IMG/VR virus record: IMGVR_UViG_3300025309_000006
Span: 62,001-126,000 of that record
Strand: one strand, 5' to 3'
Length of the DNA: 64,000 nucleotides
Part shown: positions 15,403 to 64,000 of the stretch, in pieces
How positions within the stretch are numbered: the first letter of the stretch is position 1
Layout: each line of letters opens with the position of its first letter
Notes under the pieces: generated by a model
Told to the model about the DNA's origin: nothing
The model's input: only the letters and a program-made list of their open reading frames with translations
The model's database searches: none
Translations under genes and position numbers: made by a program

Positions 15403-15413
15403 ATGAAAGAGAT

Positions 15414-19815: not shown

Positions 19816-22800
19816 AGCTACCGCAATGTACGCGCCACTCAGGTCTTTGCAGGCTGGTCTGACCACATTAAAAGAATTAGATGGATTAATGGTAAATATT
19901 GCCAAGGTAACTAATCTTAGTGCTGAAGCTATGGACAATTTAAAAAATAGTGCCTTTGAAGCGTCGAATGCTTTTGGACGTACTGCGCAAGACTATTTAA
20001 AATCAATCGGTGAATTTAGTCGTGCTGGATATGAAGGAAAATCAGCAGATTTAGCTAAAATTTCTTTATTATCACAAAACGTTGGTGAATTAACAGCAGA
20101 ACAAGCCAATAGTTTTTTACTTGCCACGGATGCTGCTTATAAATATAAGGGTAGTCAAGAAGAATTAATGAAAGTTCTTGATGGCGTAAATACTATTGAT
20201 AACAAGTTCGCAACTTCAATTCAAAAGGTTTCTGAAGGTATAACCGTGGCTGGATCTATATCTTCAAACGCATCAGTTGGAGTAAATGAACTAGCTTCAG
20301 CAGTTGGAGTTATGACTGCGGTGACACAACGTTCGGGAAATGAGGCTGGACGGGCATTTCGCAGTATTTTGATGAACATCAGACAAATTAAGGGAGAAAC
20401 TGAAGACGGAGAAATAATAGACGATGCTGCATTATCTAAATCAGCAGAAGCATTAGATAATGTTGGTATTAAAGTTCATGAATTGCGAAATGGTGTTGAA
20501 GAGATAAGAAATCCAATGGAAGTTCTTAAAGAATTATCTACCATTTGGGGTTCACTCAGTTCCATGAAAACTGCTCCAATTATAGATTCTTTGGGTGGAA
20601 AATTTAGAGGAAACCAGTTAGTGGCTCTAGTAGAAAATTTTGATATGTATGAAAAAATGCTTTCTGAATACTCTACTGCTTCCGGTTCGGCTATGACTGA
20701 GAATGAAGTGAGAATGGGCAGTTGGGAAACCAAGATTAATCAGCTCAGAAATGCAATAAATAATTTCTGGAATAATACTATTGACACAGGTTTTGTTAAA
20801 AGTATGATAGGTGGAATAACTCTATTAATAAACAACTTTGGTAATCTGAAAACTATTTTAGGATTAATATTTACCTTACTTGCAGTAAATAAAGGTACTG
20901 CTTTCTTAACATTCTTAAAGAACTTATCTTTATCTACTATGCTATTAAATTCTAGTCTAGTTCAAACACAAGCTAGATTAGCAGGAATGTCCTTCGCTCA
21001 AATCGGAGTAATGGGTACAACTACAGCATTAACTTTTGCAATTAAAGGTTTATGGGCTACTATGCTTGCTAATCCAATTGGTTTAGTTGTAGGTGCTGTT
21101 ACTGCTGTCATAGTGGCATTTGATTTTATGGGAGCCAGAGCAGAAAGTTCTGCAAAAAAACAAAAAGAAGCATTTGATGAACTTAATAGAAGCATTAGTT
21201 CTCTTAAGCAACAAACAGCAGAAAGTAAGAATTTAGCAAACCAATATGAATCTTTATCTGCTATTACATCTCGTAATAGCAATGAGGAGGCTAAATTAGC
21301 CGAAGTTAAAGATCGTTTAATTGCTCAATTTCCTGATCTAATTGAAGGATACGATGCTGAAGGTCGCTCAATAATAGGTTCATCAGAAGCAATTAAACAA
21401 GCAATCAAAGAAAATGAAGAATTATTGGCGATTAAACAAGAACAAATGTCTAATACATTTGTTACTGATGGTTCAAATAATTTCTCTCAATTACAAAAAG
21501 ATCAAGAAAGATTGGATTTATTAACTCAGCATAAAAAAGAATATTTAAAGACGATTGATGATATTAATAATGGAAACCAAGTTAAATTTGATGAATATGG
21601 AAATGATTCATTAGTAATTGCTAAAAATAATTTAAAAGGTATAAAAGACGAATTATCTACGCTTAGTACAAAAATCCTTGAAAGTAGAAAAGATTTATCA
21701 GTTTTAACAGATTCGTTTTTAAAAAGTGGCGATTCTGCACAATCTTTAGGTAAAGAAGTAGTTACAAAATTAATCTATGATTTGAGTAAACTTAAAGACG
21801 AAAGTAAAATTACAGGTGAAGAGTTTACTAAAATATTCGATGGTCTTAAAAGTTCTGATTTTTCTTCTGAATTAAGCAAAGCAAAAACAGAATTAGAAGA
21901 ATTAGCAAAAAGTGGGGCAAGCAAAGATGTAATTGGTAACACTTACGAAAAAGCAATTTCTGATTTGTCTCCATATTTAAAAGCATTAGGAATTAATGGA
22001 GAAGAAGCAGGGAAAATATTAAAAGATATGCTCAATCTCCCCAATGCCACAGAAACATCTAATAAAATAAATACTGTAACTACATCCCTCAAATCACTCC
22101 AAAAAACTCTCTCTGATTCTTCATCTGCAATTACCGAAATTCAATCTGCTCTCGATGAATACGCAGAGAATAAAGCTTTTTCGCTTGACACTCTAGTAGC
22201 ACTTGGCGATAAACATGAAAGCCTAATAGGAATCCTTGGCGACGAAAAAGCTGTTCATCAAGAATTAACAAACATTATAGAACAAGAGCAAGAAAAAGCC
22301 AGACAAGCATATATTACCATGCTTAATGATAGTGAAGATTTCTATAATAAAAATATTGAAGGTATACAAAAGTTTGTTGCTGGACTAGATGGTGCTCGTG
22401 AAGTCGATCTATCTGGAGCAAAATCATTAGCTGAAGCAAAATTAAAAGTTGAAAATGAGTTGATGAAAAATTTAGCCGGAATGTGGTCGCAATATTACGA
22501 TGCACAAGGTAATATGACCAATGCTAATATTATTGATGGCGGTAGAACTATTGTAGGCCAAGACGGTAAAGAAACCTATATTACTCCTGAAATGAGATCA
22601 CAACTTAAGGCGTATTATGATGCTTCTTCGGCAGTTAAGAAGAAATTTGATGACATTGCAATGAGTGGAACAAAAAGCATTGATTTTTCTAAACTTGGCA
22701 TGTCTAAAAGCGACAATAAGAAAGACAAAGAAAAACCCCAAATCGAATCCACAACAGAAGCCCTCATCAATCAAATCCAACAAGAATATCTCCTTCAAAA

Positions 22801-24655
22801 AGCCAAATCGGATTCAATCCAAAAAGACCTCTCTCAAGCACAATCCCAAAAAGACTACCAAAAAACTCTCTCCCTAACTAATTCCCTAATTTCCTCACAA
22901 GCTCAAGAATTATCCCTTCTTAACACAGCTCGTTCCAAAATAAACCAAGCAAAAGATTCTGCTATATCATCTGCATCCTCTCAATTTGGAGATGTTAGTG
23001 AAAGATGGTTTACTGGAAATGACAATCAAGAAAGCGTTGCATATATTGAAGAACATAATAAAGCATCAGAAAAAACTCGTGAGATAATGGATGAGACTTT
23101 TAAATCACTTCAATTACTTCGTAATGCTTGGATGTCTAATAAATCTGCTATGGATGAAAATGCAGAATCACAAAAAGTTCTTCAATCCACCCTCCCCGAC
23201 ATAAACTACTCCATCGTAACAGACCAAATATCCAAGTTTAATTCCTCCATAGACTCTCTAAATTCTCAACTTGACCTATCTAAAGCTAGAATGTCTCTTC
23301 TGGAAAATACTTCATCAGATTACAGTAAAGAATTATCTCTCCAAACATCTCTTTACAAACAATTATCTGATGAACAATTAAAATCAATTGCTTATATGAC
23401 TCAACAATTAGCAAGTGATAATTTATCTATTGAGGCAAAAAAAGAACTTTCAAAATCAATAGAAGAAGCAACTCTGTCTCAGCTAAATTATCAAAAAGCA
23501 ATTCAAGATTCAGCAAAACAACTCGCTACAGATGTAATCGAAGCTCAAAAAGCACTAGAACAAGCAGAGTTAGATGCAGAAGAAGAAATCCTGAAAGCAT
23601 ACATCAAACGTAGAGAAGAAAAAATAAAAGGTATTCAAGAAGAGATTGATGCTCTAGAAAAGAAAAATGAAAAAGAAGAAGAATCGGAAGAAAGAGCAAA
23701 GCGTCTCTTAGATATCGAAGAAAAAAAACAAAAACTTAATAATGTCTTAAATGAGGAAAATACTAGAATTCTTGTAGGTGATACTTGGACTTGGCAAGCA
23801 AACCCGAATGATGTAAAGTCTGCACAGGATGATCTAAAATCTGCTCAAGAAGACTATCTAGACTGGGAAGATGATGTCAACCTAAAACATCAAAGAGCGA
23901 CTCTTCAAGCAGAAATAGATTATCAACAATCACTAATCGACACAAAACAAGCATCATTCGATGCTCAAAAACTCCAATTTGATGAACAATGGGTAAATTT
24001 AGATGCAATGTCAACTCAATTATTAGAACAATATGAAAACAACGTTGATTCTGTAGTTGCAATTTTAAGTGAAAAATTAGTATCACTAAATGCTCAATTA
24101 GCAGAAATTGTAAATGCATCTACTTCTCTTCCAGATAGTTTATCAGGCGGTAGTAATAGTGGAAGTTCAGGTTCATCTGGTTCTTCATCTTCAAATGAAA
24201 ATGATTTTAATGTAACAAAAAGAGGTAGTTATAATCCTGATACTGGTAATTATTCTATAACAGATGAAGATGGAAATACTCACAATGGAAATGGTTCGTT
24301 AGAAGATTATGAGAATGATTTTGACAGGTATCATGATGGTGGCTGGGTTGGTGATAAACCTAAAAATTTAAAATTAAATGAAATTCCAGCTATTCTTCAA
24401 AAAGGTGAATTTGTTTTAAGTGAAAAAATGCTTAGTGGTTTACCTAATTTTATGGATATTACAAAAAATTATATGAATAATATTAAATTGCCTCAAATGC
24501 CTAATTTCATTAATAATGTGAGTAATGTTAATAAAAGTGGCAGTAATGGAGGGAATATTATTATTCAAAATCAAACAATAATTACGCCTAATGTCGATAA
24601 TTTTAAATCACAAATGTCTAGTTTAATGAGAATGACAAAAACTCAGGATTTTTAA
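19816..24655 (+). CDS. Tail tape measure protein, exon 2 (spliced product 1974 aa)
   Basis: TP901-type TMP core (FSRAGY...TQRSGNEAGRAFRSI), coiled coils, C-terminal YHDGGWVG...PAILQKGEFVL. Confidence 0.9.
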
Positions 24656-38421: not shown

Positions 38422-39276
38422 GTGAAAATATTTATTAACGCTGGTCATGGCCCAAAAGGAGTTAATAGTTCAGATTCAAATGGAATAGATCCAGGAGCAA
38501 TTGGAGCAACAGGATATAAAGAATACATAGAAACAAAAGAAATAGCAGATTTAGTATCTACAAAACTGAAATTTAATGGACTTGAAACATTAGTAATTCA
38601 AGATGGTGATTTATGGGATGTAACAAATCAGTCAAATGCTTGGAAAAGTGATTATTTTATTAGTATACACTGTAATTCGTACTCAGATTCTTCGGCAAAT
38701 GGTGTAGAAATTTTTTCATTAGCAACTACAGGGAAAGGTAGAGCACTAGCACAATCAGTACATAAAGAACTCATTCCTGCTACTGGATTGTTTGACAGAG
38801 GTTTAAAAACAGCAAATTACTATGTACTTAGGGAAACTGATTGCCCTGCTATTTTAACAGAAATTGGATTTATTTCTAATCCTAAAGAAGAAGCATTAAT
38901 GAAAGATTCTACATGGGATGATAAGGTTTCGAGTGCTATAGCAAGAGGAATTTGTAATTTTATTGGATTGGCTTATAAAGAGCAAATTGTTCAAACTATT
39001 CAGTCAACAATAAATAATAGTCAAGGAGATGATAATGTATTAAATGCTGTGCTTGGTTTCTCTCTCAATGACTTAGGTGCTTGTATGTTAGTTTCTCAGA
39101 AATTAAATAATTGTGCAATTTACTTTAGAAACACAGATAAGACTTTTAATCAAGATTGCTTAAAAGCCGATACTTTATATGTTGTAGGAGGAAGTACAGT
39201 TGGACATAAAAAAGAGAAATTGCTATCTGGTAAAGAAGCAAAAGATACATTGCAAAAAGTTGTAGATATTTTGTAA
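38422..39276 (+). CDS. Endolysin, N-acetylmuramoyl-L-alanine amidase (Amidase_3)
   Basis: IFINAGHG...E...FISIHCNS...PAILTEIGFISN; C-terminal cell-wall-binding domain (LYVVGG). Confidence 0.92.
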   Translation: MKIFINAGHGPKGVNSSDSNGIDPGAIGATGYKEYIETKEIADLVSTKLKFNGLETLVIQDGDLWDVTNQSNAWKSDYFISIHCNSYSDSSANGVEIFSLATTGKGRALAQSVHKELIPATGLFDRGLKTANYYVLRETDCPAILTEIGFISNPKEEALMKDSTWDDKVSSAIARGICNFIGLAYKEQIVQTIQSTINNSQGDDNVLNAVLGFSLNDLGACMLVSQKLNNCAIYFRNTDKTFNQDCLKADTLYVVGGSTVGHKKEKLLSGKEAKDTLQKVVDIL

Positions 39277-54507: not shown

Positions 54508-54604
54508 GTGACAACCTCCATTTCGACAATGATGGTTATATTATAGCATATTTAGTTGTTTTGTTCAAATTTGAGGTAATATGAAATTAATAAAATAATA
54601 AAAA

Positions 54605-54725
54605 CAAACAAAAAAGAAACGAAGATTGGCTGTACACACCAAATTCTTCATTTTAGCAGAGACCTTGAGATAATAAAAGCCATTGAGTTAGTTTGAGCTA
54701 GAAGAATGCTGAAAATAACTCAATG
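54605..54725 (-). ncRNA. Candidate structured small RNA
   Basis: Minus-strand TTTACA-N18-TACAAT (TGn) promoter, long hairpin CATTGAGTTA/TAACTCAATG, terminator-like hairpin with U-tract, no ORF. Confidence 0.4.
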
Positions 54726-55003
54726 TGCTTATTGTAGCATGGATTGGGTTGAGTTGTAAAGGTTAGGGTTTTTGGGATGGATATATTATCCCATAAAAGT
54801 ATGTTTTTATTTTGTTTGAAATAATGGTTTTGAAAGTGGCTTATAGCAAGGGTTGTAGAGGTGGTAATTGTTGGGATTTGGGTTATTTGGAGGGATTTTT
54901 GAGGTAAATTAGTTAGAATTTAATATTTTTTATTTTTAAAGAGCTGTTGAGGTTCTTTTTGTTTTGTTTTGTTTGGGTAGAAATTGAAATTGAATTTAAT
55001 ATT

Positions 55004-55110
55004 GGTTGGATAGGAGTCAGGCCAGACTTTTATCTGTAAAACGAGGCACTTGAGTTTTCCTTAGAACTTGAGTGTCTTATTCCAATTGTGGCTCTTATTA
55101 AGGAAAGGGG
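55004..55110 (+). promoter_or_regulatory. Structured leader RNA, copy E
   Basis: P2 GATAGGAGTC-AGGCCA-GACTTTTATC; GTAAAAC linker; long P3 whose loop TTCCTTA complements TAAGGAA at the RBS. Confidence 0.7.
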
Positions 55111-55121
55111 ATAGATTTATT

Positions 55122-56834
55122 ATGGGATTGATAACAAAAGAGGTTTGGGTAGAAGTAGGTAAAAATTTAAAACATTATGAAAAATTAAATTATTTTATAC
55201 CAAAATCAATAAATAAGTACGGAAAATTAACTGTTTCAAGAGGAACTAGAATATTAGTTAAAGTAGAAGATTTGCCTAATCGTTCTGCTGTATTTGTTGA
55301 TTGTGAATGTAACGGTTGCGGAAAAGAAATAAATAGAATACCGTGGTATAATTATAAAAGATCAGTAGTAGACGATAATAAATATTATTGTCATCAATGT
55401 GCAAAGGCTGGTCATAAAGAATGGATAAGTTTCTTTAGATGGTGTTACTTAAATTTATATAAAGAATTAGCAGATTATATTTTATCCAGATGGGATTATG
55501 AATTGAATATTGATAAAAATGGTAAATTAATAACACCAAAAGATATTAGTCATTCATCACAAGGTATTAACGGAAAAGGATATTGGTTTAAGTGTTTAGA
55601 ACATCCAGAGCATCTATCAGAACAGAAAAGTATTAGCGGTTTTGTCGGAGGGACTCGTAGTATTACTTGCAATCAATGTAATAAGGTCTCCATTACATAC
55701 CCTGCTCTCATTAAATATTTAGTAAATGAAGCTGATATGTATAAATACTCTCTTGGTTCAAATGAACAAATCCCTATGAGATGTCCATATTGTGGATATG
55801 AGAAGGATATTACAATTCCTGTTTTTATAAGAGTTGGATTTGGATGTTCAAGATGTTCAGACGGTGTGTCGTTCAGTCAAAAATTTATAGCATGTTTTTT
55901 AGAGCAGATATTAGATAAAGATTTTACAATAGAACTAAGTAAAAAAACTTTAAAATGGTGTGATAACTATAGATATGATTTTTATACAGAAAAATTAAAC
56001 GGAATTATTATAGAGGCAATGGGTATACAGCACTACGAAGAATCTTTTAGAAAAATAAGTAAAAAAGCTAGAAGTTTAGAAGAAGAACAAAAGAATGACA
56101 GAGATAAAGAACAATTAGCAAAAGAAAATAATATTGAAAATTATATAGTTTTGGATTGTAGAAAAAGTGAAATGAATTGGATTAAAAATAGTATCATGAA
56201 TAGTAATTTACCAAAATTATTAAATTTTATGGAAAAAGATATAGATTGGTTGAAATGTGGCGAAGCAGGTTATTCAAGTTTGATTAAGATTGCTTGTGAT
56301 TATTGGAATAGTGGAATAAAGAGTGTCAGAGAGATAGCAGAGAAAATGAAATTACATAGTGCTACAATTTCAAGATATCTTAAACAAGGTACTGAGTTAA
56401 ATTGGTGTGATTATGGTGGGAAAGCAGAGATGTTTCGTAAGGTAATATGTTTAACCACAGGGGAAGTTTTTAATAGTGTTACGGAAGCTGAAAATAAATA
56501 TAATACTTCTCATATTTCAGATTGTTGCAAGGGAAATAAAAAGACATCTGGAAAACTTTTAGATGGAACTAAACTTGTGTGGGTTTATTATGAAGAATAT
56601 ATATTAAGAACAGAGGAAGAAATTACAAGTATTTTAAATAATTCAAAAAATATTCGGAATGTAAAAATAATATGTACAACAACTGGTGAAAAATTTGAAA
56701 AAATATCTGATGCGGAAATCAAATATAATATTTCTGCACAAAGTATATCTAAATGTTGTAAAGGTAAATTAAATTCAGCAGGTAAACATCCCAATACAGG
56801 AGAGAAAATGGTTTGGAAAATATTTGATAAATAA
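55122..56834 (+). CDS. Free-standing homing-type endonuclease (Zn ribbons, nuclease core, HTH, two NUMOD-like repeats)
   Basis: CxxC; YDFY...IIEAMGIQHY; KVICLTTGE.F twice; paralog of 5712..7145. Confidence 0.75.
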   Translation: MGLITKEVWVEVGKNLKHYEKLNYFIPKSINKYGKLTVSRGTRILVKVEDLPNRSAVFVDCECNGCGKEINRIPWYNYKRSVVDDNKYYCHQCAKAGHKEWISFFRWCYLNLYKELADYILSRWDYELNIDKNGKLITPKDISHSSQGINGKGYWFKCLEHPEHLSEQKSISGFVGGTRSITCNQCNKVSITYPALIKYLVNEADMYKYSLGSNEQIPMRCPYCGYEKDITIPVFIRVGFGCSRCSDGVSFSQKFIACFLEQILDKDFTIELSKKTLKWCDNYRYDFYTEKLNGIIIEAMGIQHYEESFRKISKKARSLEEEQKNDRDKEQLAKENNIENYIVLDCRKSEMNWIKNSIMNSNLPKLLNFMEKDIDWLKCGEAGYSSLIKIACDYWNSGIKSVREIAEKMKLHSATISRYLKQGTELNWCDYGGKAEMFRKVICLTTGEVFNSVTEAENKYNTSHISDCCKGNKKTSGKLLDGTKLVWVYYEEYILRTEEEITSILNNSKNIRNVKIICTTTGEKFEKISDAEIKYNISAQSISKCCKGKLNSAGKHPNTGEKMVWKIFDK

Positions 56835-56839
56835 TATTA

Positions 56840-56876
56840 TAGAGAGTAATCACAAAATTAATGTGATTACTCTCTA
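56840..56876. terminator. Bidirectional terminator between convergent units
   Basis: TAGAGAGTAATCACA/TGTGATTACTCTCTA. Confidence 0.75.
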
Positions 56877-56888
56877 TTTTTTACGCTT

Positions 56889-58346
56889 TTAATTTTCCAT
56901 TACATGATTGATAATTAAAGTGGCGATATCCTTCTGAACCTTTGAAGAATTCACAAGTTTCGATCCCTCCCTAAGACAGAAATTCCATATAGGATTACTC
57001 CTACTTAGAAATTTTTTGTCTGACAACTTTGTAAGTCTATTCTCCCAATCATTTTCCTTGCGTAATCTATTAGCAAGAGCAAAGAAACCTGATATAAACA
57101 TATTTTCTAAAATAAAATTCTGCTTTCTTTGTTCCGATTTTGCTTCAATATCAATATTGCCCATTGCTTCAGGGAATATATTACTAATTAATTCATCCCA
57201 AAATTTAACAAGATATAAACCAATCTCTTCTGCTTCTTTTGGATTTAATGCTTTAAATTGTGCTACATTATCAAGTAGAGTTTTATAAGTGATAATTTTA
57301 TTGCTTGATTTTGAAATTGTTCCAGAAACTAACTCTATCTTACCTTTGAGCAAACTTTGATTCGCAATTATGTCAACAATTTTGCGATTTTCATTGAAAA
57401 CATCATGAAAAGCCAACCTAGTACGACTTACAGCCTTACCTTTTGAATTTGCTTCTACAAAAAGATTTTCTGACTCTGAGTGAGACAAATTAAAAATCAC
57501 CACTGGTATATAAAATTCTCTAGGATCTTTTATGCTAAGAGCATCCTTTTTGAATCGTTTAACCCAAATCTTCATACTTTCTAACCTATGGGCTGCATCG
57601 CAGATGGTTAAAGCATGTTGTCCAGATAAAGTATTGTCATCTTCGTTAAAGTGAAGTGGTTCAGGATATTCTTTTGCATAATTTAATAATACTTGACCAG
57701 CATCCATAGAACCGTCTAACATTTTTGATAAGATAGTTTTAACATTGGCAGTATAAATTAATGGTTTTTCCTCTCCTTTTGCGGTGGTACGCGAACCTCT
57801 CTGAACTGAGGGATCGTATATCACTGAAGGAGTTTTTCCAGAGTACATTTCATTTAGTTGATAACAATTTAATGTTGTGATCCATTTGTAAATAGAACCA
57901 TTACGATAAACGGGTTGGCAATTTGGTATTGACCAAAAATATCCATCTTCTTTATTATTGCTTTCTTTCCCAGTCTTAACCTTATTACTTAAACTACCAA
58001 ACACAGGCATATTGGCATTCCCCATATTTCTTTCTCTCATTTTTTTCTTTAGTTCTTCATCAGATTCTACAACTTTATCAATTTTATCAACTTCAATAAT
58101 CTTATCACTCCTATCTTCTTCCCATTTTTCATCCTCATCAATAATTTCATCCAAACTTTCAAATCCTGCTGAAGTTTCACTCATAGTTTTGCTAAATTCT
58201 TGTGTCATCGTATTGATTGCCTCTTCCTTAACTTGATTAACTACATTAGTGTTTGTCTGAGCAAGTCTGTCTCTACTTTTTCTTCCCATGTCTTCTTCTC
58301 CTTCCATAGTTTCCTTGACTAATTTATTAACCATATCAATAATCAT
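56889..58346 (-). CDS. DGQHR/DndB-like (ParB superfamily) protein
   Basis: VQRG...LTICDAAHRL...E..LF..ANSKGKAVS. Confidence 0.65.
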   Translation of the reverse strand: MIIDMVNKLVKETMEGEEDMGRKSRDRLAQTNTNVVNQVKEEAINTMTQEFSKTMSETSAGFESLDEIIDEDEKWEEDRSDKIIEVDKIDKVVESDEELKKKMRERNMGNANMPVFGSLSNKVKTGKESNNKEDGYFWSIPNCQPVYRNGSIYKWITTLNCYQLNEMYSGKTPSVIYDPSVQRGSRTTAKGEEKPLIYTANVKTILSKMLDGSMDAGQVLLNYAKEYPEPLHFNEDDNTLSGQHALTICDAAHRLESMKIWVKRFKKDALSIKDPREFYIPVVIFNLSHSESENLFVEANSKGKAVSRTRLAFHDVFNENRKIVDIIANQSLLKGKIELVSGTISKSSNKIITYKTLLDNVAQFKALNPKEAEEIGLYLVKFWDELISNIFPEAMGNIDIEAKSEQRKQNFILENMFISGFFALANRLRKENDWENRLTKLSDKKFLSRSNPIWNFCLREGSKLVNSSKVQKDIATLIINHVMEN

Positions 58347-58452
58347 AATAAAACCGCCTTTCTATGACTATATCATATTTATACACAAAAACATAGAGAA
58401 TAATACCTAAATTTTCTTAAAAATAAAGAAAAAGAATGATTTCTCATTCTTT

Positions 58453-58620
58453 CTAATCAATAATTATCCCTTTTTCTCTTAGAAAATCCTCTTCTGCAAG
58501 TAATATTTCCTCAATAAGATTCTCGTTAACTCCTGTCCTTTGAGCAATTTGTTGAATCATAAGATCAACATCAATCGTCGGTTTGCTAAAACTATTGATG
58601 ATGTTCCCTAAAATTCCCAT
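58453..58620 (-). CDS. Small hypothetical protein (55 aa)
   Basis: MGILGNIINSFSKP...EEDFLREKGII; RBS AAGGAG. Confidence 0.55.
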   Translation of the reverse strand: MGILGNIINSFSKPTIDVDLMIQQIAQRTGVNENLIEEILLAEEDFLREKGIIID

Positions 58621-58633
58621 TATAGCCATCTCC

Positions 58634-59407
58634 TTATTTCATTTTCCATACCGTGATATCTGGAATTATTCTTATCTTTTTCATATTTGGATATTGAGTA
58701 AAAATATAAAAATTTTCTCTTAATTCTTCTATTTGAGCGATGTTAACTTGTTTGCCTAAGTTAGTTAATCTTCTAAACCCTGCTGAATTAGTTAACCAAA
58801 ACAATTGAGGAAACCCCTTTACCTTCTGAGATACTTTTTCGTAAATATCAATCTTTTCTTTCAGTTGTTTTTTAGATTCTGTCCCTGCGTCAATTTCAAA
58901 TAACAAGGTGGTGTCTTGTTCATCCTTAGTTAACACAATCAATATATCTGATCTAAAAATATATTGCTTACCATTTTCTCTATCCTTGTATTTATAAATG
59001 AATTCAGGTTTATATTGCTTAATAAAAATCTTATTTAAATTTTGCTCCCGAATCAGCAAAGCATAAATTTCATTAACTAATAGTTGATGAGTATAATCTG
59101 AAGGTAGTTTAGATAAATTCACTCCACCAATTTGGCAAAGTAATTTACCTGCCGTAACTAAGGATTCGCCATTTAATGCCACTGGAGTTCTTTTAATAAA
59201 TTCTAATCTTTCTATTTTAGCTAGTCTTCGATTACAAACAGTTAAACTTTGTTTAGATTGAAAGAACATTATTTGAATCTGAGTTCTGGAAAAAATTTTA
59301 AAATCTCTAATACTTCTTATTATCTCTAAATCTCTCCCCGTTAAATGGGCGTACTTTTGTCCCAAAATCAATTTTTCCAACATCAAATCTTTGCTGATCA
59401 TTGTCAA
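58634..59407 (-). CDS. Replication-relaxation (Replic_Relax) family relaxase
   Basis: LT.RD..I...SRTQI...RRL...HQL..NE...RSD...FEIDAGTE....LKEK...Y. Confidence 0.8.
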   Translation of the reverse strand: MTMISKDLMLEKLILGQKYAHLTGRDLEIIRSIRDFKIFSRTQIQIMFFQSKQSLTVCNRRLAKIERLEFIKRTPVALNGESLVTAGKLLCQIGGVNLSKLPSDYTHQLLVNEIYALLIREQNLNKIFIKQYKPEFIYKYKDRENGKQYIFRSDILIVLTKDEQDTTLLFEIDAGTESKKQLKEKIDIYEKVSQKVKGFPQLFWLTNSAGFRRLTNLGKQVNIAQIEELRENFYIFTQYPNMKKIRIIPDITVWKMK

Positions 59408-61019
59408 TCACCTCTATATTAAAATCTGGTTCGGGGATATAATCCGATTCCAAAATTTCTTCCATAATTTCATCAACAGAACGTAAATATTTTTGACTAT
59501 TTTGATTAATAGCATCTGGTATTTGCTTGCGTAAAGGTTTGGTTGGAGGATCACATTTAATAATAGATATACTTTTTTCACTTTTGTATAAAAATCTACA
59601 GAGTGCATGATATTTAGGAAGATTAAGAATAGCATATCTGTTAGACATATCTTTTTCTTCATCTCCTGTTTCAAATTCTTTAAACAGTGTTTGTGCTCCT
59701 CCTCTACCTATAGCAAAAGATATAATCTGAGGTTGTACTTCTAACATCATTCTAATAAGTGATTGAATTTGAGTTTGTTCTGGAGACTGGAAGAAAAAAT
59801 GTAAGCATAGTCGGTATTTTCTTGCTTCTGTTAAAATTTCTTCAATTCCAGCCTCATTTGACAAATACATTTGGGGTTCGTCAAGAAAAAGCATGAAAAT
59901 CCTCCTTTTATTTTTATCTGTAATATCAAATCTTGATAAAGCTGCAATCCAAAACTTAGAAATAATTAGAGGGATCAGTATCTCAATATTAACTTTTCCG
60001 ACAGCAACTTTTGGGGCTTTAATTAAAAGTATTTTTCCTTCATCCATTATCGTCCTGAAGTCAATAGTAGATTTGTTTTGACATATAATTGATTTCAAAT
60101 AATCATTATTAGTAAGATTTCCTACTTTGTTTAACAATGGTTTAATCATATCTCTTTTAACTGATGGAGGTTGGGCTTCAAATCTGTCCCAATATCTAAC
60201 AACAGAAGCGTTCCTTTTGTTTTTTCTTAAAGACTTTACTATTTGTTCACGATATTCTACTTCAGTTAACATTTTGATAATTCCTAAAAGAGTTTTAGGA
60301 TAATCAGTTTGTTTAAGAATCGCGTTCAATGAATTTGATAAAAGATCCTCACTTGCAAAACCTATTTGTTCTCCGAATCTTTTTTTGAAAAATGAAATTA
60401 TCTCTGCATGAATAAAGTGGGGAAACTGTTTCTCAACTTTTTCATCAAATTCTAAGAGATTAATTCCTGGAAGAAAATCTTTATTGGAAAAGTCTAATAA
60501 AACAACATCCTCTAATCTATTTTCTGGGATAGACATTAAAATATTGTCAATTAATGCTCCATCTGCTACGTCTATAACACAAAATCCTGCGGTATTGAAA
60601 TTTTGTAAATTGTTAATTTTAGATATTTGGATTGCAATATTTTCAGCCAAATTTGTCTTGCCACTCCCAGGTGAACCCACGTATATAGAATTTTTGCTAA
60701 GGTCGTCAAAATGATCTATAGGATAACTAATTACATTTTTTGTATTTAAATCTTTGCCCATTACTATACCATTACCTTTGAGTAAAAATTTACTAGGTTT
60801 TAACACTACCCTATCTCCTAACGAATTTTTATCATCGCCAAACTTCAAATTAGGTAATTTATAATCTGGAATACCTTGACCTAAAATACCATTTGAAATC
60901 ATTTGAACTGTATAACCAAGACATCCTAACACAAATTTACTGCTATATAGAGCAGAATATTTTCCTGATTTAATGGTTAAGTCTTTAATCTTATTAATTT
61001 TATCTCCCACTATACTCAA
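59307..61019 (-). CDS. VirD4/TraG-like coupling ATPase
   Basis: GSPGSGKT; VID..G; IDF..IMD.GKILL; LFLDE.Q; EARKYRL. Confidence 0.8.
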   Translation of the reverse strand: MSIVGDKINKIKDLTIKSGKYSALYSSKFVLGCLGYTVQMISNGILGQGIPDYKLPNLKFGDDKNSLGDRVVLKPSKFLLKGNGIVMGKDLNTKNVISYPIDHFDDLSKNSIYVGSPGSGKTNLAENIAIQISKINNLQNFNTAGFCVIDVADGALIDNILMSIPENRLEDVVLLDFSNKDFLPGINLLEFDEKVEKQFPHFIHAEIISFFKKRFGEQIGFASEDLLSNSLNAILKQTDYPKTLLGIIKMLTEVEYREQIVKSLRKNKRNASVVRYWDRFEAQPPSVKRDMIKPLLNKVGNLTNNDYLKSIICQNKSTIDFRTIMDEGKILLIKAPKVAVGKVNIEILIPLIISKFWIAALSRFDITDKNKRRIFMLFLDEPQMYLSNEAGIEEILTEARKYRLCLHFFFQSPEQTQIQSLIRMMLEVQPQIISFAIGRGGAQTLFKEFETGDEEKDMSNRYAILNLPKYHALCRFLYKSEKSISIIKCDPPTKPLRKQIPDAINQNSQKYLRSVDEIMEEILESDYIPEPDFNIEVIDNDQQRFDVGKIDFGTKVRPFNGERFRDNKKY

Positions 61020-62511
61020 CCCCTTTCATTTCTTCGTAATTAGTGTTGAATAGAAGATATTCTTTATCATCAAATATTGGTCTAAAAGCATATTGCTTAG
61101 TTCCTATAGTCATCCAACCTTGTCCTTTCTCAATTCTAGATAAGTAGTCAATAATGTGAGGTGGTATATTCATATAATTACTAATATGTTGCAACTCTAA
61201 AGAAGTTAAATGAAGAATTAAAGTATTGGCACAATTTTTAATAATTAATTCAATATCATCCTTAGAGCAATCAGTGAGGTTCTGGGTGCAAACAAAAATG
61301 CCCACCCCTCTCTTACGATAACCTTTAGCAATTGCTACAACTCTCTTAATTACTGCATCCGTTTTTAAAATATTCCATGCTTCATCAATTACAATAAGAC
61401 AATCTTTAAATTCAGTTTTGAGTAAGAACTTTTCAAAATCCTTAGATATAATAACAATATTCCTTGAAGTTAATTTAGCATATTCACCAGTGATATCAAG
61501 AATATAAATTTTCTTATGTGCAGATATTTTCTTTATAATTGACTTTACTGCAAAACTCTTGCCACTTCCTGAAATTCCAAAAATGAAAAATGAATTATTA
61601 AATGTCTCTGCAAAGTTAATTTTAATTAATTGATGGTTTTGATAATCATATCCAATAGTAATACCTTTGCCGGAAACATATCTTACAAATGGATAGAAAT
61701 TACTAATTGCACTTGTTAAAAATACTTTTAACTCCTTTACATGATCAATTTCTTTGTATGCTCTGAAATTCTTGAAACAATTAAAATGTTCACAATTAGC
61801 AAACTTAAATCTTATCTGCATACCATCTAAAAGCATAGATATTTGCTTTGTTTTTGTTTCTAATTGTTCAAGTGTTTGTCCTTTAATTAAGATATATAAT
61901 CCAACCATGCAAAGTTTTTCTTCATTTCCCATAAGATCAACCATTGTTTTTTGTAACTTCTCTACAATTTCATCTTCTACAAAAAACTCTTGATTTGGGT
62001 TCTTTGAGGCTTTCCAATTTACATTTGCTTCAGTAGTATCAATTCTTTTTTTTACGGCCTTTACAGCCTCTTCTTGTGGCAATGGAAAGATAGTAATAGC
62101 AATCTCAGTGTCAGGAATCATTAGATTGTTTATGAATCCCACAGAAAGCATTTGAGGATATTGGATAACTTTAATTAATTTAGCAAAATATTTTTCATTG
62201 TTTTCAGTGACAGAAATATACTTCCTAAATTCTTTAATTTGGATATTGCTTGAAGTTGAACATTCAGATTGAGCATAGTCCATTCCCGAATTACGCAGGT
62301 TTTCACAAATATCAGAATTGGTAATTAGATAATAACTTGATTCGTTTATTTGTGTATCTTTGTTTAAATAATTTAAATCAGTTTTACAAATTATCCTTGA
62401 TGAATCATTTAGAGAATTTAGCAAATATTTAAACTTGGATCTGAGTAATATTTGATCTTCTTTTGTTGCTAAAAGATAGTTTGCTTTTGGGTAAAGTTGA
62501 TATTGAAACAT
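61000..62511 (-). CDS. Compact VirB4-like ATPase
   Basis: N..IFGISGSGKSF; ILD..GEY; IDEAW; RKRG....CTQ. Confidence 0.8.
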   Translation of the reverse strand: MFQYQLYPKANYLLATKEDQILLRSKFKYLLNSLNDSSRIICKTDLNYLNKDTQINESSYYLITNSDICENLRNSGMDYAQSECSTSSNIQIKEFRKYISVTENNEKYFAKLIKVIQYPQMLSVGFINNLMIPDTEIAITIFPLPQEEAVKAVKKRIDTTEANVNWKASKNPNQEFFVEDEIVEKLQKTMVDLMGNEEKLCMVGLYILIKGQTLEQLETKTKQISMLLDGMQIRFKFANCEHFNCFKNFRAYKEIDHVKELKVFLTSAISNFYPFVRYVSGKGITIGYDYQNHQLIKINFAETFNNSFFIFGISGSGKSFAVKSIIKKISAHKKIYILDITGEYAKLTSRNIVIISKDFEKFLLKTEFKDCLIVIDEAWNILKTDAVIKRVVAIAKGYRKRGVGIFVCTQNLTDCSKDDIELIIKNCANTLILHLTSLELQHISNYMNIPPHIIDYLSRIEKGQGWMTIGTKQYAFRPIFDDKEYLLFNTNYEEMKGVEYSGR

Positions 62512-62776
62512 TTTGTTTTGTCATTCCTTTCCACTTAAATTTAAAGAAAGATACTACTCCTTGGTCTATATCTGTTTTCGTAAGAATTGCTGTAGGAATA
62601 CCAATATTTGGTAATATAAATAATTTTAAATAAATAGGTAAAGTTGTATTAAAAACCGATAATCCAAGTATAACCCCACCTATTAAATAAATAGTTTGTT
62701 TCCCTGTAAGTCCATAAAATATTTCATCCTTCATTTCAATAATTTGATTTGTGTCGAACATTTCAGTATTTAACAT
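62429..62776 (-). CDS. PrgI/VirB3-like membrane protein
   Basis: IFYGLTGKQ followed by two TM segments, directly upstream of the VirB4-like gene. Confidence 0.7.
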   Translation of the reverse strand: MLNTEMFDTNQIIEMKDEIFYGLTGKQTIYLIGGVILGLSVFNTTLPIYLKLFILPNIGIPTAILTKTDIDQGVVSFFKFKWKGMTKQNVSISTLPKSKLSFSNKRRSNITQIQV

Positions 62777-62780
62777 TAAA

Positions 62781-63776
62781 TTACCTCCTTCTACTCGCTC
62801 CTCTTCTTGAAGACATCATACCTCCCATTCTACCAAATCCACTATATCTAATAAGTTTTCTAGGGCTTAATCCATATTTTATCTCTCTAAACATAGCAAC
62901 TGGATTCGGAGCTTGGTGTCCATAACTAATCCATTGTTGAACATATGAAGGTGCTTTTAGCATAAATGATCCTGCCGATATACAAAGCATAATATGATAA
63001 AGTCCTCCGTGATTTGATTTTGATATTGAAGACTCAAATCCTAACCAAATCACCATAATAATCGCATGGATAATTGGAGCAATTAAGTTATCTAATAATT
63101 CATCAATCCATACCTGTCTCATATTTTGATGTTTGGGAAATAAACATAGATAGAAAAATATAGGTGCTGTAGCAACTAGAAACATAATAGAAATCATTCT
63201 CATGAAATAAAACCATATTAAATTGACTAATATCATTGCAAAAATTAAAGTGAATATAATTAGACCTAAACCATACTGTGGAGTTAAAGCTCTGACCATT
63301 TGTGCTTCTGAACCGCCTAGAGATAGAATAACAATGGTAAATTTGTTTGTTGCATCTATTATCATTGGAAGTGCAATTATTGCAATATTTACAATGACCA
63401 TTGATTGAGCTATCTTCACAATATATTCTGTACTCTGATATTTACTACTTTTATTCATAATTTGCATAATTCCAAAATATACAATTCCTGCTATTGAGAA
63501 TGTCATTATGATCTTTAAGAAGAAATAGTATAAAGATAATATTGTAGGATTTTCTGCCAATACATTAGGCGTGTGAAGAAATAATTGTGTAAAATTTTGA
63601 ACTAGAGAATCAGTAATAAAATGTTCTAATCTTCCATTTACTGTAGAAATATCTTGAGGTGTAGGTGCATTAAATAAAGCATCATTAACATTTTGAACTG
63701 TTTCTAGGGATGGAGGTGTGATAAAAAATTTAATTATAGCATCTCCTGCTTCTCCAACAGTGAGCAATGGAATCAT
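62781..63776 (-). CDS. VirB6/TrbL-like polytopic membrane protein
   Basis: Several TMs; R...I.FL...API......P......W; position in the module. Confidence 0.7.
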   Translation of the reverse strand: MIPLLTVGEAGDAIIKFFITPPSLETVQNVNDALFNAPTPQDISTVNGRLEHFITDSLVQNFTQLFLHTPNVLAENPTILSLYYFFLKIIMTFSIAGIVYFGIMQIMNKSSKYQSTEYIVKIAQSMVIVNIAIIALPMIIDATNKFTIVILSLGGSEAQMVRALTPQYGLGLIIFTLIFAMILVNLIWFYFMRMISIMFLVATAPIFFYLCLFPKHQNMRQVWIDELLDNLIAPIIHAIIMVIWLGFESSISKSNHGGLYHIMLCISAGSFMLKAPSYVQQWISYGHQAPNPVAMFREIKYGLSPRKLIRYSGFGRMGGMMSSRRGASRRR

Positions 63777-63806
63777 CCCCTTTATGAAGTTATAATAATT
63801 TTAATC

Positions 63807-64000
63807 TTAAAATTTTGGCATTGTTGGAAATACTCCTTTAAGTATTGTCCAGACAATCTTCACTACCCAAGGCCCAACAATTATAGTTATACATCCACGG
63901 ATTACCGATTCCTTAAGCTCTTTGGATTGAGCTTTCCAATTTCCATTTCCAATGACATCCATGACACCAGCCCAGACTATCATGATCATAGCTAAACCAA
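63807..64000 (-). CDS. VirB2/TrbC-like pilin (5'-truncated by the window edge)
   Basis: Two hydrophobic helices separated by AQSKE.K...G; upstream of the VirB6-like gene. Confidence 0.5.
   Translation of the reverse strand, partial: GLAMIMIVWAGVMDVIGNGNWKAQSKELKESVIRGCITIIVGPWVVKIVWTILKGVFPTMPKF

What the first reader, a model, noticed from the sequence alone, without database searches (positions are those of the whole stretch)
56889..64000. Minimal conjugation-like module contiguous with a full siphophage tail and lysis region
Seen: one minus-strand operon of pilin-like, VirB6-like, PrgI-like, short VirB4-like (503 aa), VirD4-like and Replic_Relax genes, followed by a DGQHR protein. No integrase, att-like repeat or obvious compositional break separates it from the phage accessory genes in this window. 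Established: such modules belong to Firmicutes plasmids and ICEs, not normally to tailed phages. Inference: a phage-plasmid with both virion and cell-to-cell transfer routes.
Basis: partly seen in the sequence, partly recalled or inferred. Interest (0 to 1): 0.75.

Follow-up and report, generated by a model that had tools for sequence, protein, structure and literature searches.

The report
Conjugation-type secretion module inside jumbo phage
A large tailed phage from groundwater carries, in the middle of its own genome, an intact seven-gene copy of the machinery that plasmids use to pump DNA into neighbouring cells. Smaller versions of the same module occur in well-known lytic Bacillus phages, where nobody knows what they do.

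Summary
Window 56889-64000 holds a co-directional minus-strand block: pilin-like, VirB6/TrbL-like, PrgI/VirB3-like, short VirB4, a T4CP (VirD4/TrwB-like) ATPase, a Replic_Relax (CONJscan MOBC) relaxase, a 58-aa ORF and a DndB/DGQHR protein. An anchored M23 peptidoglycan hydrolase lies just beyond the window.

The block sits inside one 227-kb IMG/VR virus record. Terminase, portal, a 1609-aa tape measure and an endolysin lie on one side. DNA polymerase, helicase, RNR and ligase lie on the other. I found no adjacent integrase, no att-like repeat and no compositional break. A single 7.3-kb unitig spans the junction and depth is uniform across it. All module genes are under purifying selection (dN/dS 0.08-0.19).

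The premise that such modules do not belong to tailed phages is wrong. Bacillus phage G has the same set in the same order. Lytic SPO1-like phage JL has the actin-like protein, T4CP and Replic_Relax, and lytic SPP1 has the T4CP (gp32, non-essential). Every module protein tested except the VirB3-like and pilin-like ones falls in a PHROG.

My reading is that this is a phage-lineage T4SS-type DNA translocon in its most complete form, probably moving phage DNA across a membrane without virions. Phage-plasmid status is plausible but unproven.

The parts
63807..64000 (-). Pilin-like (VirB2/TrbC-like) two-TM protein of 83 aa and first gene of the block. It is cut by the window end and continues to window-equivalent 64058 (G000 99991-100242).
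   Evidence: Two TM segments. Atlas TrbC/VirB2 and T4SS_pilin clusters at 0.89-0.92. 41% identity to the equivalent gene of the L028 cassette. dN/dS about 0.15.
62781..63776 (-). VirB6/TrbL-like polytopic membrane protein, 331 aa.
   Evidence: Five TM segments by hydropathy. Atlas TrbL_3/4/5 clusters at 0.92. 22% identity, E 2e-7, to phage G gp153, which hits Pfam TrbL_4 at 1.8e-11. phrog_3750. dN/dS 0.08-0.11.
62429..62776 (-). PrgI/VirB3-like small membrane protein, 115 aa. It overlaps the start of the VirB4 gene.
   Evidence: Pfam PrgI at 24.8 bits, below the cut-off of 27. Atlas PrgI/DUF5592 clusters at 0.93. TrbL-PrgI-VirB4 order matches a bona fide Firmicutes-type T4SS cluster.
61000..62511 (-). 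Short VirB4-family ATPase, 503 aa.
   Evidence: Pfam DUF87, P-loop_TraG and AAA_10. NCBIfam CD1110 VirB4-like 1e-31 and CedB 2.6e-13. The AF2 model matches full-length TrwK/VirB4. Walker A G315-S319 and Walker B D376-E377 are invariant. phrog_2666.
59307..61019 (-). Type IV coupling-protein-like ATPase (TrwB/VirD4 fold with an all-alpha insert), 567-570 aa, with no strong TM segment.
   Evidence: AF2 pLDDT 83 with TrwB, Cag-beta, HerA and DndH-C as top folds. 7879 library representatives at E<=1e-3. The aligned set carries TrwB_AAD_bind, TraG-D_C and T4SS-DNA_transf. phrog_5156 at 1.6e-70. Homologous to phage G gp156, JL gp150 and SPP1 gp32.
58634..59407 (-). Replic_Relax protein (winged-helix plus PD-(D/E)XK nuclease; CONJscan MOBC relaxase family), 257 aa.
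   Evidence: Pfam PF13814 at 46.3 bits against a cut-off of 25.3. phrog_9381, 9996 and 2190. Homologous to JL gp149 and phage G gp146. The PF13814 = MOBC equivalence comes from PMC5357655 and the PD-(D/E)XK fold from PMC3424549. dN/dS about 0.1.
58453..58629 (-). 58-aa acidic ORF downstream of the relaxase, conserved in relatives. Possibly a relaxase accessory protein; function unknown.
   Evidence: ORF. 52-59% identity in L016-L018. No family hit.
56889..58346 (-). DndB/DGQHR-domain protein of 485 aa, last gene of the block. It evolves much faster than the T4SS genes.
   Evidence: Pfam DndB 3.8e-17. TIGR03187 DGQHR. phrog_5732 at 1e-31. Only 31-39% identity in relatives whose T4SS genes are 73-88% identical. 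No TGT/DpdA in the genome.
56839..56877 (.). Perfect 16-bp-stem hairpin at the point where the plus-strand (late) arm and the minus-strand arm converge. It acts as a bidirectional terminator.
   Evidence: GC skew changes sign here.
55068..56834 (+). Homing endonuclease of 588 aa and last gene of the plus arm. A paralogue (G000 104231-105736, minus strand) lies on the other side of the module.
   Evidence: phrog_4538 and 9084. Member of a family with at least six copies in this genome. The 237-nt, 72% inverted repeat is gene paralogy, not att.
19826..24655 (+). Tail tape measure protein of 1609 aa, evidence for the phage context.
   Evidence: phrog_4211 at 1e-108. SPbeta-like relatives.
38422..39276 (+). 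Amidase_3 endolysin, evidence for the phage context.
   Evidence: Pfam 2.3e-41.

Best explanation
The block is an intact, phage-resident type IV secretion (conjugation-type) DNA translocon. It is not a passenger ICE or plasmid.

Proposed mechanism:
- The Replic_Relax/MOBC nuclease binds and cuts a cis site on the phage DNA. A candidate is the near-invariant 110-bp non-coding stretch with an inverted repeat just upstream of the pilin-like gene.
- The soluble TrwB-like coupling ATPase takes the DNA to a membrane channel built from the VirB6-like, VirB3-like and VirB2-like proteins and energised by the short VirB4.
- The membrane-anchored M23 peptidase, encoded in the operon immediately upstream, opens the peptidoglycan.
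- The ParM-like actin with parC-like iterons, 3 kb further upstream, may position the DNA.

The outcome would be contact-dependent, virion-independent movement of phage DNA out of the infected or lysogenic cell. That would be a second transmission or persistence route beside the siphovirus particle.

Shown: gene identities, intactness, purifying selection, residence in a phage genome, and conservation of the cassette across phage lineages.

Inferred: DNA as the substrate, the direction of transport, the cis site, and the biological role.
For: - Gene identities.
- Catalytic motifs are invariant. The M23 HxxxD and HxH motifs are present in the translation.
- dN/dS is 0.08-0.19 for all seven genes at dS of about 0.2-1.9.
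- The whole record is phage: terminase, portal, tape measure, endolysin, DNA polymerase, DnaB-like helicase, RNR and ligase.
- There is no integrase nearby and no att, and no compositional break.
- The junction is spanned by one 7.3-kb unitig with no differences, and depth is uniform at 57x and about 360x in two samples.
- The same block has the same flanks in four identical and three divergent IMG/VR contigs. One of these also carries a tape measure gene, convergent with the block.
- The same six-gene cassette, at 30-47% identity, sits next to phage-type replication genes in an unrelated 72-kb contig.
- Phage G has Replic_Relax, pilin, VirB6, VirB3, VirB4 and T4CP homologues, the last five in the same order.
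- The VirB4 sequences of this phage, L028 and phage G group together against sampled T4SS VirB4s.
- The nearest non-phage VirB4s lie in ordinary T4SS clusters. One has TrbL-PrgI-VirB4 order and another has an M23-containing hydrolase.
Against: - No VirB8/TcpC-like component exists anywhere in the genome.
- No oriT has been identified, and no function has been demonstrated.
- The T4CP-like protein has no clear membrane anchor.
- Reduced versions occur in strictly lytic phages, and SPP1 gene 32 is dispensable for plaque growth (PMC6316719). The role therefore need not be inter-cell transfer.
- Phage G gp155/156 were not detected in virions and their function is called 'entirely unknown' (PMC12484599).
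- PHROG annotations of the relaxase family read 'replication initiation by nicking'.
- The host is unknown.
Confidence: 0.45

Rival explanations
1. One reading: the element is a true phage-plasmid. It would be a low-copy plasmid prophage that spreads both as virions and by self-conjugation between cells during lysogeny.
For: - A ParM/ALP partition protein (phrog_691, 1e-27) with four 11-bp iterons forming a perfect 47-bp palindrome upstream.
- A DnaA_N-domain protein next to it.
- An XRE-type repressor-like protein and an Ant anti-repressor.
- No full-size integrase, only a 186-aa tyrosine recombinase that could resolve dimers.
- A complete relaxase, T4CP and VirB4 set.
Against: - Homologous ALP, T4CP and Replic_Relax sit together in the strictly lytic Herelleviridae phage JL, so these genes do not indicate a plasmid lifestyle.
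- The record is linear without end repeats. A near-identical 230-kb contig adds 25.8 kb that does not join the other end.
- No relative was found in 185,579 species genomes or in PLSDB at the DNA level.
- About 360x depth in a groundwater sample suits active lytic growth.
- Among E. coli phage-plasmids, conjugation genes were seen in only 6 of 222 and were ascribed to co-integrates or artefacts (PMC10123127).
Confidence: 0.25
2. A sporulation-linked translocon. The module, with the actin-like protein, would move the phage genome across the sporulation septum or into the forespore (or between cells of a chain), so that the phage is carried in spores. This would be a specialisation of phages of endospore-forming Bacillota.
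For: - tblastn of the T4CP-like protein hit 118 phage records: Bacillus 110, Geobacillus 2, Lysinibacillus 2, deep-sea Geobacillus phage 2, Clostridium 1, Microcystis 1.
- SPP1 gp32 as query gave 107 records, again all from spore-forming genera except one Microcystis.
- No Staphylococcus, Listeria, Lactococcus, Streptococcus or Enterococcus phage appeared. The same database returns such phages for the tape measure.
- The phage encodes a sigma factor whose best solved relative is sporulation sigma F.
- The M23 protein has the SpoIIQ-like layout of an N-terminal anchor plus a LytM domain, and scores 4e-20 on the SpoIIQ model.
- Phage G manipulates sporulation (PMC12484599).
Against: - The host-range pattern could be simple gene sharing among Bacillus phages.
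- The M23 domain matches generic M23 models equally well.
- No SASP gene is present.
- The host of this phage is unknown.
- No paper links these proteins to spores.
Confidence: 0.15
3. A non-transfer phage function. One option is membrane anchoring and nick-initiated replication of the phage genome (Replic_Relax as a nicking initiator, ATPases as motors). Another is a Ced-like DNA import or superinfection-control device.
For: - PHROG labels for the relaxase family read 'replication initiation by nicking' and 'replication initiation protein'.
- The module lies beside replication genes in L028.
- NCBIfam gives hits to the archaeal DNA-import proteins CedB (2.6e-13) and CedD (8e-5), and there is a CedA1-like Atlas lead for the pilin-like protein.
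- Both ATPases also resemble HerA and mad8 defence ATPases.
- SPP1 gp32 is non-essential (PMC6316719).
Against: - Co-occurrence of VirB2-, VirB3-, VirB6- and VirB4-like proteins in canonical order with a peptidoglycan hydrolase points to an envelope-spanning channel rather than a replisome.
- The genome has its own DnaB-like helicase and polymerase.
- The Ced similarity is weak and far below the model cut-offs.
Confidence: 0.12
4. The module is foreign to the phage: an ICE or plasmid inserted in or co-integrated with a prophage, or an assembly chimera.
For: - Codon usage of the module is 1.9 SD from the genome mean.
- Two paralogous genes flank the region in inverted orientation.
- In a relative, the module is far better conserved (73-88%) than the tape measure (26-30%).
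Against: - Phage genes lie on both sides for 93 and 127 kb.
- The flanking paralogues are homing endonucleases of a family with at least six copies.
- There is no integrase within 100 kb and no att.
- A single unitig crosses the junction and depth is uniform.
- Seven independent contigs have the same arrangement.
- 6% of same-size gene runs are as deviant in codon usage, and the tetranucleotide profile is normal.
- The nearest plasmid homologues share only about 25% identity.
Confidence: 0.03

Closest known systems
Bacillus phage G cluster gp146 and gp150-gp156 (JN638751)
   Same: - Same parts: Replic_Relax-like (gp146), T4SS_pilin/TrbC (gp150), TrbL_4/VirB6 (gp153), a small TM protein (gp154), VirB4-like (gp155) and T4CP-like (gp156).
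- The pilin-VirB6-VirB3-VirB4-T4CP order is the same.
- The VirB4 proteins group together in a tree.
- Published function: 'entirely unknown' (PMC12484599).
   Different: - 22-28% identity only.
- Phage G is a 497-kb myovirus of a Bacillus host.
- Its relaxase-like gene is on the opposite strand upstream rather than at the end of the operon.
- Its T4CP-like protein has a roughly 370-aa N-terminal extension.
- A metallopeptidase (gp149) stands in place of the M23 enzyme.
phrog_5156 T4CP-like ATPases of Bacillus phages: SPP1 gp31.1/31.2/gp32 'putative translocon', and JL gp149-gp155
   Same: - The T4CP-like ATPase is homologous: E 1.6e-70 to the PHROG profile, and 23-27% identity to SPP1 gp32 and JL gp150.
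- JL also has the ParM/StbA-like actin and a Replic_Relax homologue in one operon.
- SPP1 authors proposed a membrane translocon (PMC6316719).
   Different: - No VirB4 homologue was found in SPP1, JL or other cultured phages apart from phage G, and no VirB6-, VirB3- or pilin-like match in the JL or SPP1 regions examined. They are reduced forms in strictly lytic phages.
- SPP1 gene 32 is dispensable.
Firmicutes-type conjugative T4SS (MPF FA/FATA: C. difficile CD1110/CD1115 families, pCF10 Prg, ICEBs1 Con, pCW3 Tcp)
   Same: - VirB4 is closest to the CD1110 family model.
- TrbL-PrgI-VirB4 gene order is shared.
- A T4SS_pilin-like small protein and an M23-containing hydrolase occur in a nearest-neighbour cluster.
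- A T4CP and a relaxase are present.
   Different: - All scores are far below the family cut-offs (110 against 325 bits for VirB4).
- VirB4 is 503 aa against 600-840.
- There is no VirB8/TcpC/PrgL-like protein.
- The T4CP has no clear TM anchor.
- The module sits in a virus, not a plasmid or ICE.
MOBC relaxases (pAD1 TraX, CloDF13 MobC) and streptococcal class-8 IMEs (MobC relaxase plus VirD4 coupling protein)
   Same: - Pfam Replic_Relax equals the CONJscan MOBC profile.
- The relaxase gene lies next to a VirD4-type coupling-protein gene (PMC5357655).
   Different: - There is no serine integrase beside it.
- Sequence relatedness to characterised MOBC relaxases was not tested directly here.
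- No oriT is known.
Phage-plasmids (P1, N15, VP882 types)
   Same: Tailed-phage genes together with a type II (ParM-like) partition locus with iterons.
   Different: - Known phage-plasmids very rarely carry conjugation genes, and when they do these are ascribed to co-integrates (PMC10123127).
- Plasmid state is not shown here.
Archaeal Ced DNA-import system
   Same: Weak model hits to CedB and CedD for the two ATPases, and a CedA1-like lead for the small TM protein. It is a VirB4/HerA-driven membrane DNA translocon without a relaxase-dependent pilus.
   Different: - Scores are far below the cut-offs.
- Ced has no relaxase.
- It belongs to a different domain of life.

Membership tests
Self-transmissible conjugative system (CONJscan logic: relaxase + T4CP + VirB4 + type-specific MPF genes, co-localised) | VirB4-family ATPase | tested here: met
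   N- and C-domains match TrwK, and Walker A and B are invariant. The protein is short (503 aa) and below the NCBIfam family cut-offs.
Self-transmissible conjugative system (CONJscan logic) | Type IV coupling protein | tested here: met
   TrwB-like fold with an all-alpha domain. The aligned set carries TrwB_AAD_bind, TraG-D_C and T4SS-DNA_transf. The protein itself gives no Pfam hit and lacks a clear TM anchor.
Self-transmissible conjugative system (CONJscan logic) | Relaxase of a recognised MOB family | tested here: met
   PF13814 Replic_Relax at 46.3 bits, above the cut-off of 25.3. It is equated with MOBC in PMC5357655. The CONJscan MOBC profile itself was not run.
Self-transmissible conjugative system (CONJscan logic) | MPF accessory set: VirB6-like, VirB3/PrgI-like, small pilin-like protein and peptidoglycan hydrolase | tested here: met
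   PrgI is just below the Pfam cut-off. The hydrolase lies in the adjacent upstream operon.
Self-transmissible conjugative system (CONJscan logic) | VirB8-like (TcpC/PrgL/ConB) channel component | tested here: not met
   No PF12642 or PF04335 match in the 227-kb record. The TpcC control rang in B. subtilis. No candidate of suitable size exists among the neighbouring ORFs.
Self-transmissible conjugative system (CONJscan logic) | oriT recognised by the relaxase | tested here: inconclusive
   A conserved 110-bp non-coding stretch with an inverted repeat lies upstream of the pilin-like gene. It could equally be a set of promoters or operators. No reference MOBC oriT was available.
Self-transmissible conjugative system (CONJscan logic) | Demonstrated DNA transfer | not testable with these tools
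   This needs mating assays.
Integrative conjugative element | Integrase adjacent to the module, and att repeats bounding it | tested here: not met
   Phage genes lie on both sides.
Phage-plasmid | Complete tailed-phage gene set | tested here: met
   Terminase, portal, tape measure, tail proteins and endolysin. CheckV estimates 100% completeness.
Phage-plasmid | Plasmid partition or replication genes | tested here: inconclusive
   A ParM-like ALP with 11-bp iterons and a DnaA_N protein are present. The homologous ALP is also found in lytic phage JL.
Phage-plasmid | Extrachromosomal circular prophage state | tested here: inconclusive
   There is no terminal overlap. G000 and G001 ends do not join. 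No isolate genome carries it.
Phage T4CP-like translocon family (phrog_5156; SPP1 gp32 type) | Homology of the ATPase, and residence among early or middle phage genes with small TM proteins | tested here: met
   phrog_5156 at 1.6e-70. 118 phage records. Neighbouring TM proteins.

The most novel reading that the evidence does not exclude
Phages of endospore-forming Bacillota carry a graded family of T4SS-derived DNA translocons. The forms run from T4CP only, through T4CP with a MOBC nuclease and a ParM-like actin, to the full VirB2/3/4/6 set seen here and in phage G. In this reading they move the phage genome without virions, into the forespore or into neighbouring cells. That would give these phages a dormancy or contact route of transmission distinct from both infection and classical lysogeny.
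Probability: 0.17. Interest if true: 0.85.

Novelty: new variant of a known kind. Interest (0 to 1): 0.62.

Why it matters
Phages and conjugative elements are treated as using mutually exclusive transfer machines. Surveys dismiss conjugation genes in phage-plasmids as co-integrates or artefacts (PMC10123127).

Here a complete, selected relaxase, coupling-protein and VirB4 channel set is an integral part of a jumbo phage lineage. It is homologous to unexplained genes in model phages (SPP1 gp32, SPO1-like JL, phage G) whose role authors call unknown (PMC6316719, PMC12484599). That turns a scattered annotation curiosity into a testable question in tractable B. subtilis systems: do tailed phages move their DNA by a conjugation-like route?

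If they do, estimates of phage host range, persistence in spores and gene flow would all need revising. If they do not, the module would show a T4SS re-purposed for a new intracellular task.

Tried and rejected
- Near-identity DNA searches of the block in PLSDB and INPHARED found nothing.
- The Replic_Relax protein gave no tblastn hit in phages. Homologues in JL and phage G appeared only in pairwise or local searches.
- Scans of 185,579 species genomes with the VirB4-like protein and with the phage ligase, tried for host assignment, found nothing.
- 'Relatives' are not available for a virus record.
- I tried to close the genome with the near-identical 230-kb contig and failed. The two contigs are identical over 184.8 kb and then diverge, and the extra 25.8 kb does not meet the other end.
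- The context of the chromosomal VirB4-like P0015 was uninformative.
- Rfam on the upstream region gave only a sub-threshold STnc100 match. RNAalifold on the conserved leader gave no convincing structure or covariation.
- The DndB-like protein as part of a 7-deazaguanine (Dpd) system: no TGT/DpdA gene. As a Dnd defence gene: only a weak PADLOC DndB hit, with no partner genes seen.
- An SASP gene as a spore-host marker is absent.
- The flanking inverted paralogues as transposon or att ends: rejected, because they are homing endonucleases.
I re-ran it without that row.
- MacSyFinder/CONJscan could not be run in the sandbox.

Full report
**Where the window lies.** The window is positions 36185-100184 of a single 227,247-bp record. 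It is an IMG/VR virus record classed as linear, with CheckV completeness of 100%. GC content is about 28% throughout.

A crude ORF call gives 343 genes in two convergent arms. The plus-strand arm runs from 1 to 93 kb and the minus-strand arm from 93 to 227 kb. The arms meet at a perfect 16-bp-stem bidirectional terminator hairpin at window 56839-56877, where GC skew changes sign.

The plus arm holds a terminase-like protein, a portal, a 1609-aa tape measure and tail proteins, and an Amidase_3 endolysin. The tape measure is distantly SPbeta-like. The minus arm holds a 1030-aa DNA polymerase, a DnaB-like helicase, exonucleases, ribonucleotide reductase, an NAD-dependent ligase and more than 200 small ORFs. 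Homing endonucleases of one family are scattered through both arms. This is the architecture of a jumbo siphophage.

- **VirB4-like, 503 aa.** It has DUF87, P-loop_TraG and AAA_10 signatures. It scores 1e-31 on the NCBIfam model for the CD1110 family of VirB4-like conjugal ATPases. Its AlphaFold model (pLDDT 78) finds full-length TrwK/VirB4 of the R388 T4SS as best matches (E 6e-17, TMq 0.63), ahead of isolated VirB4 C-domains, HerA, FtsK and TcpA. Walker A and B are invariant in the family alignment.
- **T4CP-like, 570 aa.** It has no Pfam hit itself. An exhaustive HMMER search finds 7,879 cluster representatives. Of 52 aligned sequences (the query and 51 homologues), 42 carry TrwB_AAD_bind, 37 TraG-D_C and 29 T4SS-DNA_transf. 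Its model (pLDDT 83, pTM 0.81) shows a RecA-like core with an all-alpha insert and matches TrwB, Cag-beta, DotL-complex, HerA and DndH-C chains at E of 1e-10 to 1e-8.
- **Relaxase, 257 aa.** It passes the Pfam threshold for Replic_Relax. That PD-(D/E)XK family (PMC3424549) is the one CONJscan recognises as MOBC relaxases (PMC5357655).
- **Small membrane proteins.** The 115-aa, 331-aa and 83-aa proteins are PrgI/VirB3-like, TrbL/VirB6-like and TrbC/VirB2-like. The evidence is hydropathy, Pfam near-threshold or transitive hits and language-model neighbours.
- **Last gene.** This is a DndB/DGQHR protein.

Beyond the window end, in the next operon upstream, lie a membrane-anchored M23 peptidase with intact HxxxD and HxH motifs and a 65-aa two-TM protein. 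A terminator and about 360 bp of intergenic DNA separate that operon from the block. Three kilobases further up lies a ParM/Alp-type actin (phrog_691). It is preceded by a 47-bp perfect palindrome made of four 11-bp iterons.

**Is it foreign to the phage?** No.

- The record has one 186-aa tyrosine recombinase about 110 kb away and no serine recombinase.
- Repeats around the block are chance-level. The exception is a 237-nt, 72% inverted repeat that is simply two paralogous homing-endonuclease genes.
- The tetranucleotide profile is ordinary. Codon usage is 1.9 SD from the mean, a value matched by 6% of same-size gene runs.
- Logan contigs from groundwater metagenomes include one 7.3-kb unitig crossing the plus-arm/module junction without a difference. 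Word depth is flat on both sides, at 57x in one sample and about 360x in another.
- Four IMG/VR contigs from different samples carry the block at 100% identity; flanks, checked in one of them (L012), are identical. Three divergent contigs keep M23 through the 58-aa ORF at 52-93% amino-acid identity (the T4SS and relaxase genes at 73-88%) while the DndB-like gene has drifted to 31-39%.
- One of those relatives also carries a tape-measure gene, convergent with the block as here, but only 26-30% identical.
- dN/dS for the seven core genes is 0.08-0.19 at dS of about 0.2-1.9. They are maintained by selection.

- **Phage G (497 kb).** It has, in the same order, a T4SS_pilin/TrbC protein (gp150), a TrbL_4 protein (gp153), a small TM protein (gp154), a VirB4-like ATPase (gp155; 26% identity, E 1e-25) and a T4CP-like ATPase (gp156; 27%, E 1e-33). 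A Replic_Relax homologue (gp146) lies just upstream. A 2025 study calls gp155/156 TraC- and TraD-like, absent from virions, with function 'entirely unknown' (PMC12484599).
- **The T4CP-like protein in other phages.** It belongs to phrog_5156 (E 1.6e-70) and has homologues in 118 phage records. These include strictly lytic SPP1, whose gp32 is non-essential and was proposed, with the TM proteins gp31.1/31.2, to form a translocon (PMC6316719). They also include SPO1-like phages.
- **Phage JL.** A StbA/ParM-like actin, small proteins, the ATPase and a Replic_Relax homologue form one operon.
- **B. pumilus siphoviruses.** TrbC/VirB2, Replic_Relax and FtsK-like genes have been reported together (PMC9658697).
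- **An unrelated 72-kb metagenomic contig.** It carries the same six-gene cassette at 30-47% identity next to DnaB, primase, a sigma factor and PolA genes.
- **Tree.** The VirB4s of this phage, that contig and phage G group together against the sampled T4SS VirB4s (92/91 support, long branches).
- **Nearest non-phage VirB4s.** They sit in ordinary Firmicutes-type T4SS clusters. One has TrbL-PrgI-VirB4 order and another has an SLT+M23 hydrolase.
- **Plasmid homologues.** They reach only about 25% identity.

So the cassette is a compact derivative of a Gram-positive T4SS with a long history inside phages. The present lineage and phage G carry the fullest forms.

**How it most likely works.** The parts list matches the minimal Gram-positive conjugation apparatus:

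- a relaxase (MOBC);
- a coupling ATPase;
- VirB4 with its VirB3 partner;
- a VirB6 channel;
- a VirB2-like small protein;
- a wall hydrolase.

The economical inference is a DNA translocon. In this model the nuclease cuts a phage cis site and the T4CP feeds DNA to a VirB4-energised membrane channel.

A candidate cis site is the roughly 110-bp non-coding stretch upstream of the pilin-like gene. It is nearly invariant in four lineages whose synonymous sites are near saturation, and it contains a conserved imperfect inverted repeat. It also lies between divergent genes, so it may simply hold promoters and operators.

Three things are missing: a VirB8-like protein, a TM anchor on the T4CP, and any experimental evidence.

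I give 0.45 to conjugation-like, virion-independent export of phage DNA. The specific claim of a plasmid prophage with two routes gets 0.25. The partition locus, a repressor-like gene and an Ant anti-repressor favour it. Against it, the same actin, T4CP and relaxase trio occurs in lytic JL, and the genome could not be closed.

**A more novel reading.** Two independent tblastn queries, this T4CP and SPP1 gp32, hit only phages of endospore-forming genera: Bacillus, Geobacillus, Lysinibacillus, Brevibacillus, Alicyclobacillus, Clostridium and Terrisporobacter. The single exception in each search was a Microcystis record. No Staphylococcus, Listeria, Lactococcus, Streptococcus or Enterococcus phage was hit, although the database returns such phages for the tape measure.

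This phage also encodes a sigma factor whose best solved relative is sporulation sigma F. Its M23 protein has the SpoIIQ-like layout of an anchor plus a LytM domain.

A translocon that places phage DNA in the forespore or in sister cells would fit these facts. The evidence is only correlative. The host is unknown and no SASP gene is present.

**Verdict.** The module is real, intact and phage-resident, but it is not an anomaly borrowed from plasmids, and phage-plasmid status is unproven.

It is a new and unusually complete variant of a phage-borne T4SS-like module that the literature has noticed but never explained. The homologues in SPP1, SPO1-like phages and phage G make the question directly testable.

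Noticed in passing
window 36638-37828 (+): A TnpB/IS605 OrfB gene (HTH_OrfB_IS605, OrfB_IS605 and Cas12f1-like TNB domains) sits between the tail genes and the endolysin.
   Followed up: no
window 5712-7145, 15396-16562, 49367-50533, 55068-56834; L003:4231-5736(-); L007:1002-2738(-): At least six paralogous homing-endonuclease genes (phrog_4538, 559, 9084) are spread over both arms. Two of them bracket the T4SS-like region in inverted orientation.
   Followed up: partly
L003:243-620 (G000 100243-100620), just beyond the window end: Upstream of the pilin-like gene are three features. There is a terminator hairpin. There is a 28-aa hydrophobic ORF on the opposite strand, resembling a type I toxin or a holin. 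And there is about 110 bp of non-coding DNA, almost invariant in four diverged lineages, with a conserved imperfect inverted repeat. No Rfam family matches.
   Followed up: partly
L003:4163-4209 (G000 104163-104209): A 47-bp perfect palindrome made of four 11-bp TTGTAATACAA iterons lies directly upstream of the probable start of the ParM/Alp-like gene. It looks like a parC-type centromere.
   Followed up: partly
L033:1054-1776(-) (G000 199993-200715): A phage-encoded sigma factor of 240 aa. Its best match among solved structures is sporulation sigma F in 1l0o (E 1e-15).
   Followed up: partly
G001 (L021-L023) versus G000: A 230.3-kb IMG/VR contig is identical to this record over G000 1-184833. 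After that it becomes mosaic (77-88% identity in patches). It also carries 25.8 kb of extra sequence upstream that matches nothing in G000. The true genome is probably at least 253 kb, or it has variable ends.
   Followed up: partly
G002 (contig of L017), 98.8-103.4 kb: A relative keeps the T4SS-like genes at 73-88% amino-acid identity, but its tape measure (a 2001-aa ORF) is only 26-30% identical. This indicates strong mosaicism between the early arm and the tail module.
   Followed up: no
window 54575-54784: A minor population variant in three metagenomes replaces 208 nt of the intergenic region upstream of the repressor-like gene with TTTTAT. Its depth is about 8 against 61, and 125 against 390.
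   Followed up: no
window 56889-58346 (-): The DndB/DGQHR protein has a roughly 240-aa charged N-terminal extension. It diverges far faster than its neighbours (31-39% against 73-88% identity; dN/dS 0.33-0.49), as expected of a defence or counter-defence gene. No Dnd or Dpd partner genes were found.
   Followed up: partly
window 7765-8538 (+) and 53458-54507 (-): An Ant-type anti-repressor (phrog_130, 4e-71) and a 349-aa zinc-ribbon plus XRE-HTH regulator. These hint at a temperate lifestyle but do not prove it.
   Followed up: no
plasmid records H83-H103: Both ATPases have homologues at about 25% identity on the large (148-274 kb) Clostridium botulinum and C. sporogenes plasmids. The T4CP-like one also has them on many Bacillus, Streptomyces and haloarchaeal plasmids. 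MOB-suite types most of these plasmids as 'non-mobilizable'.
   Followed up: no
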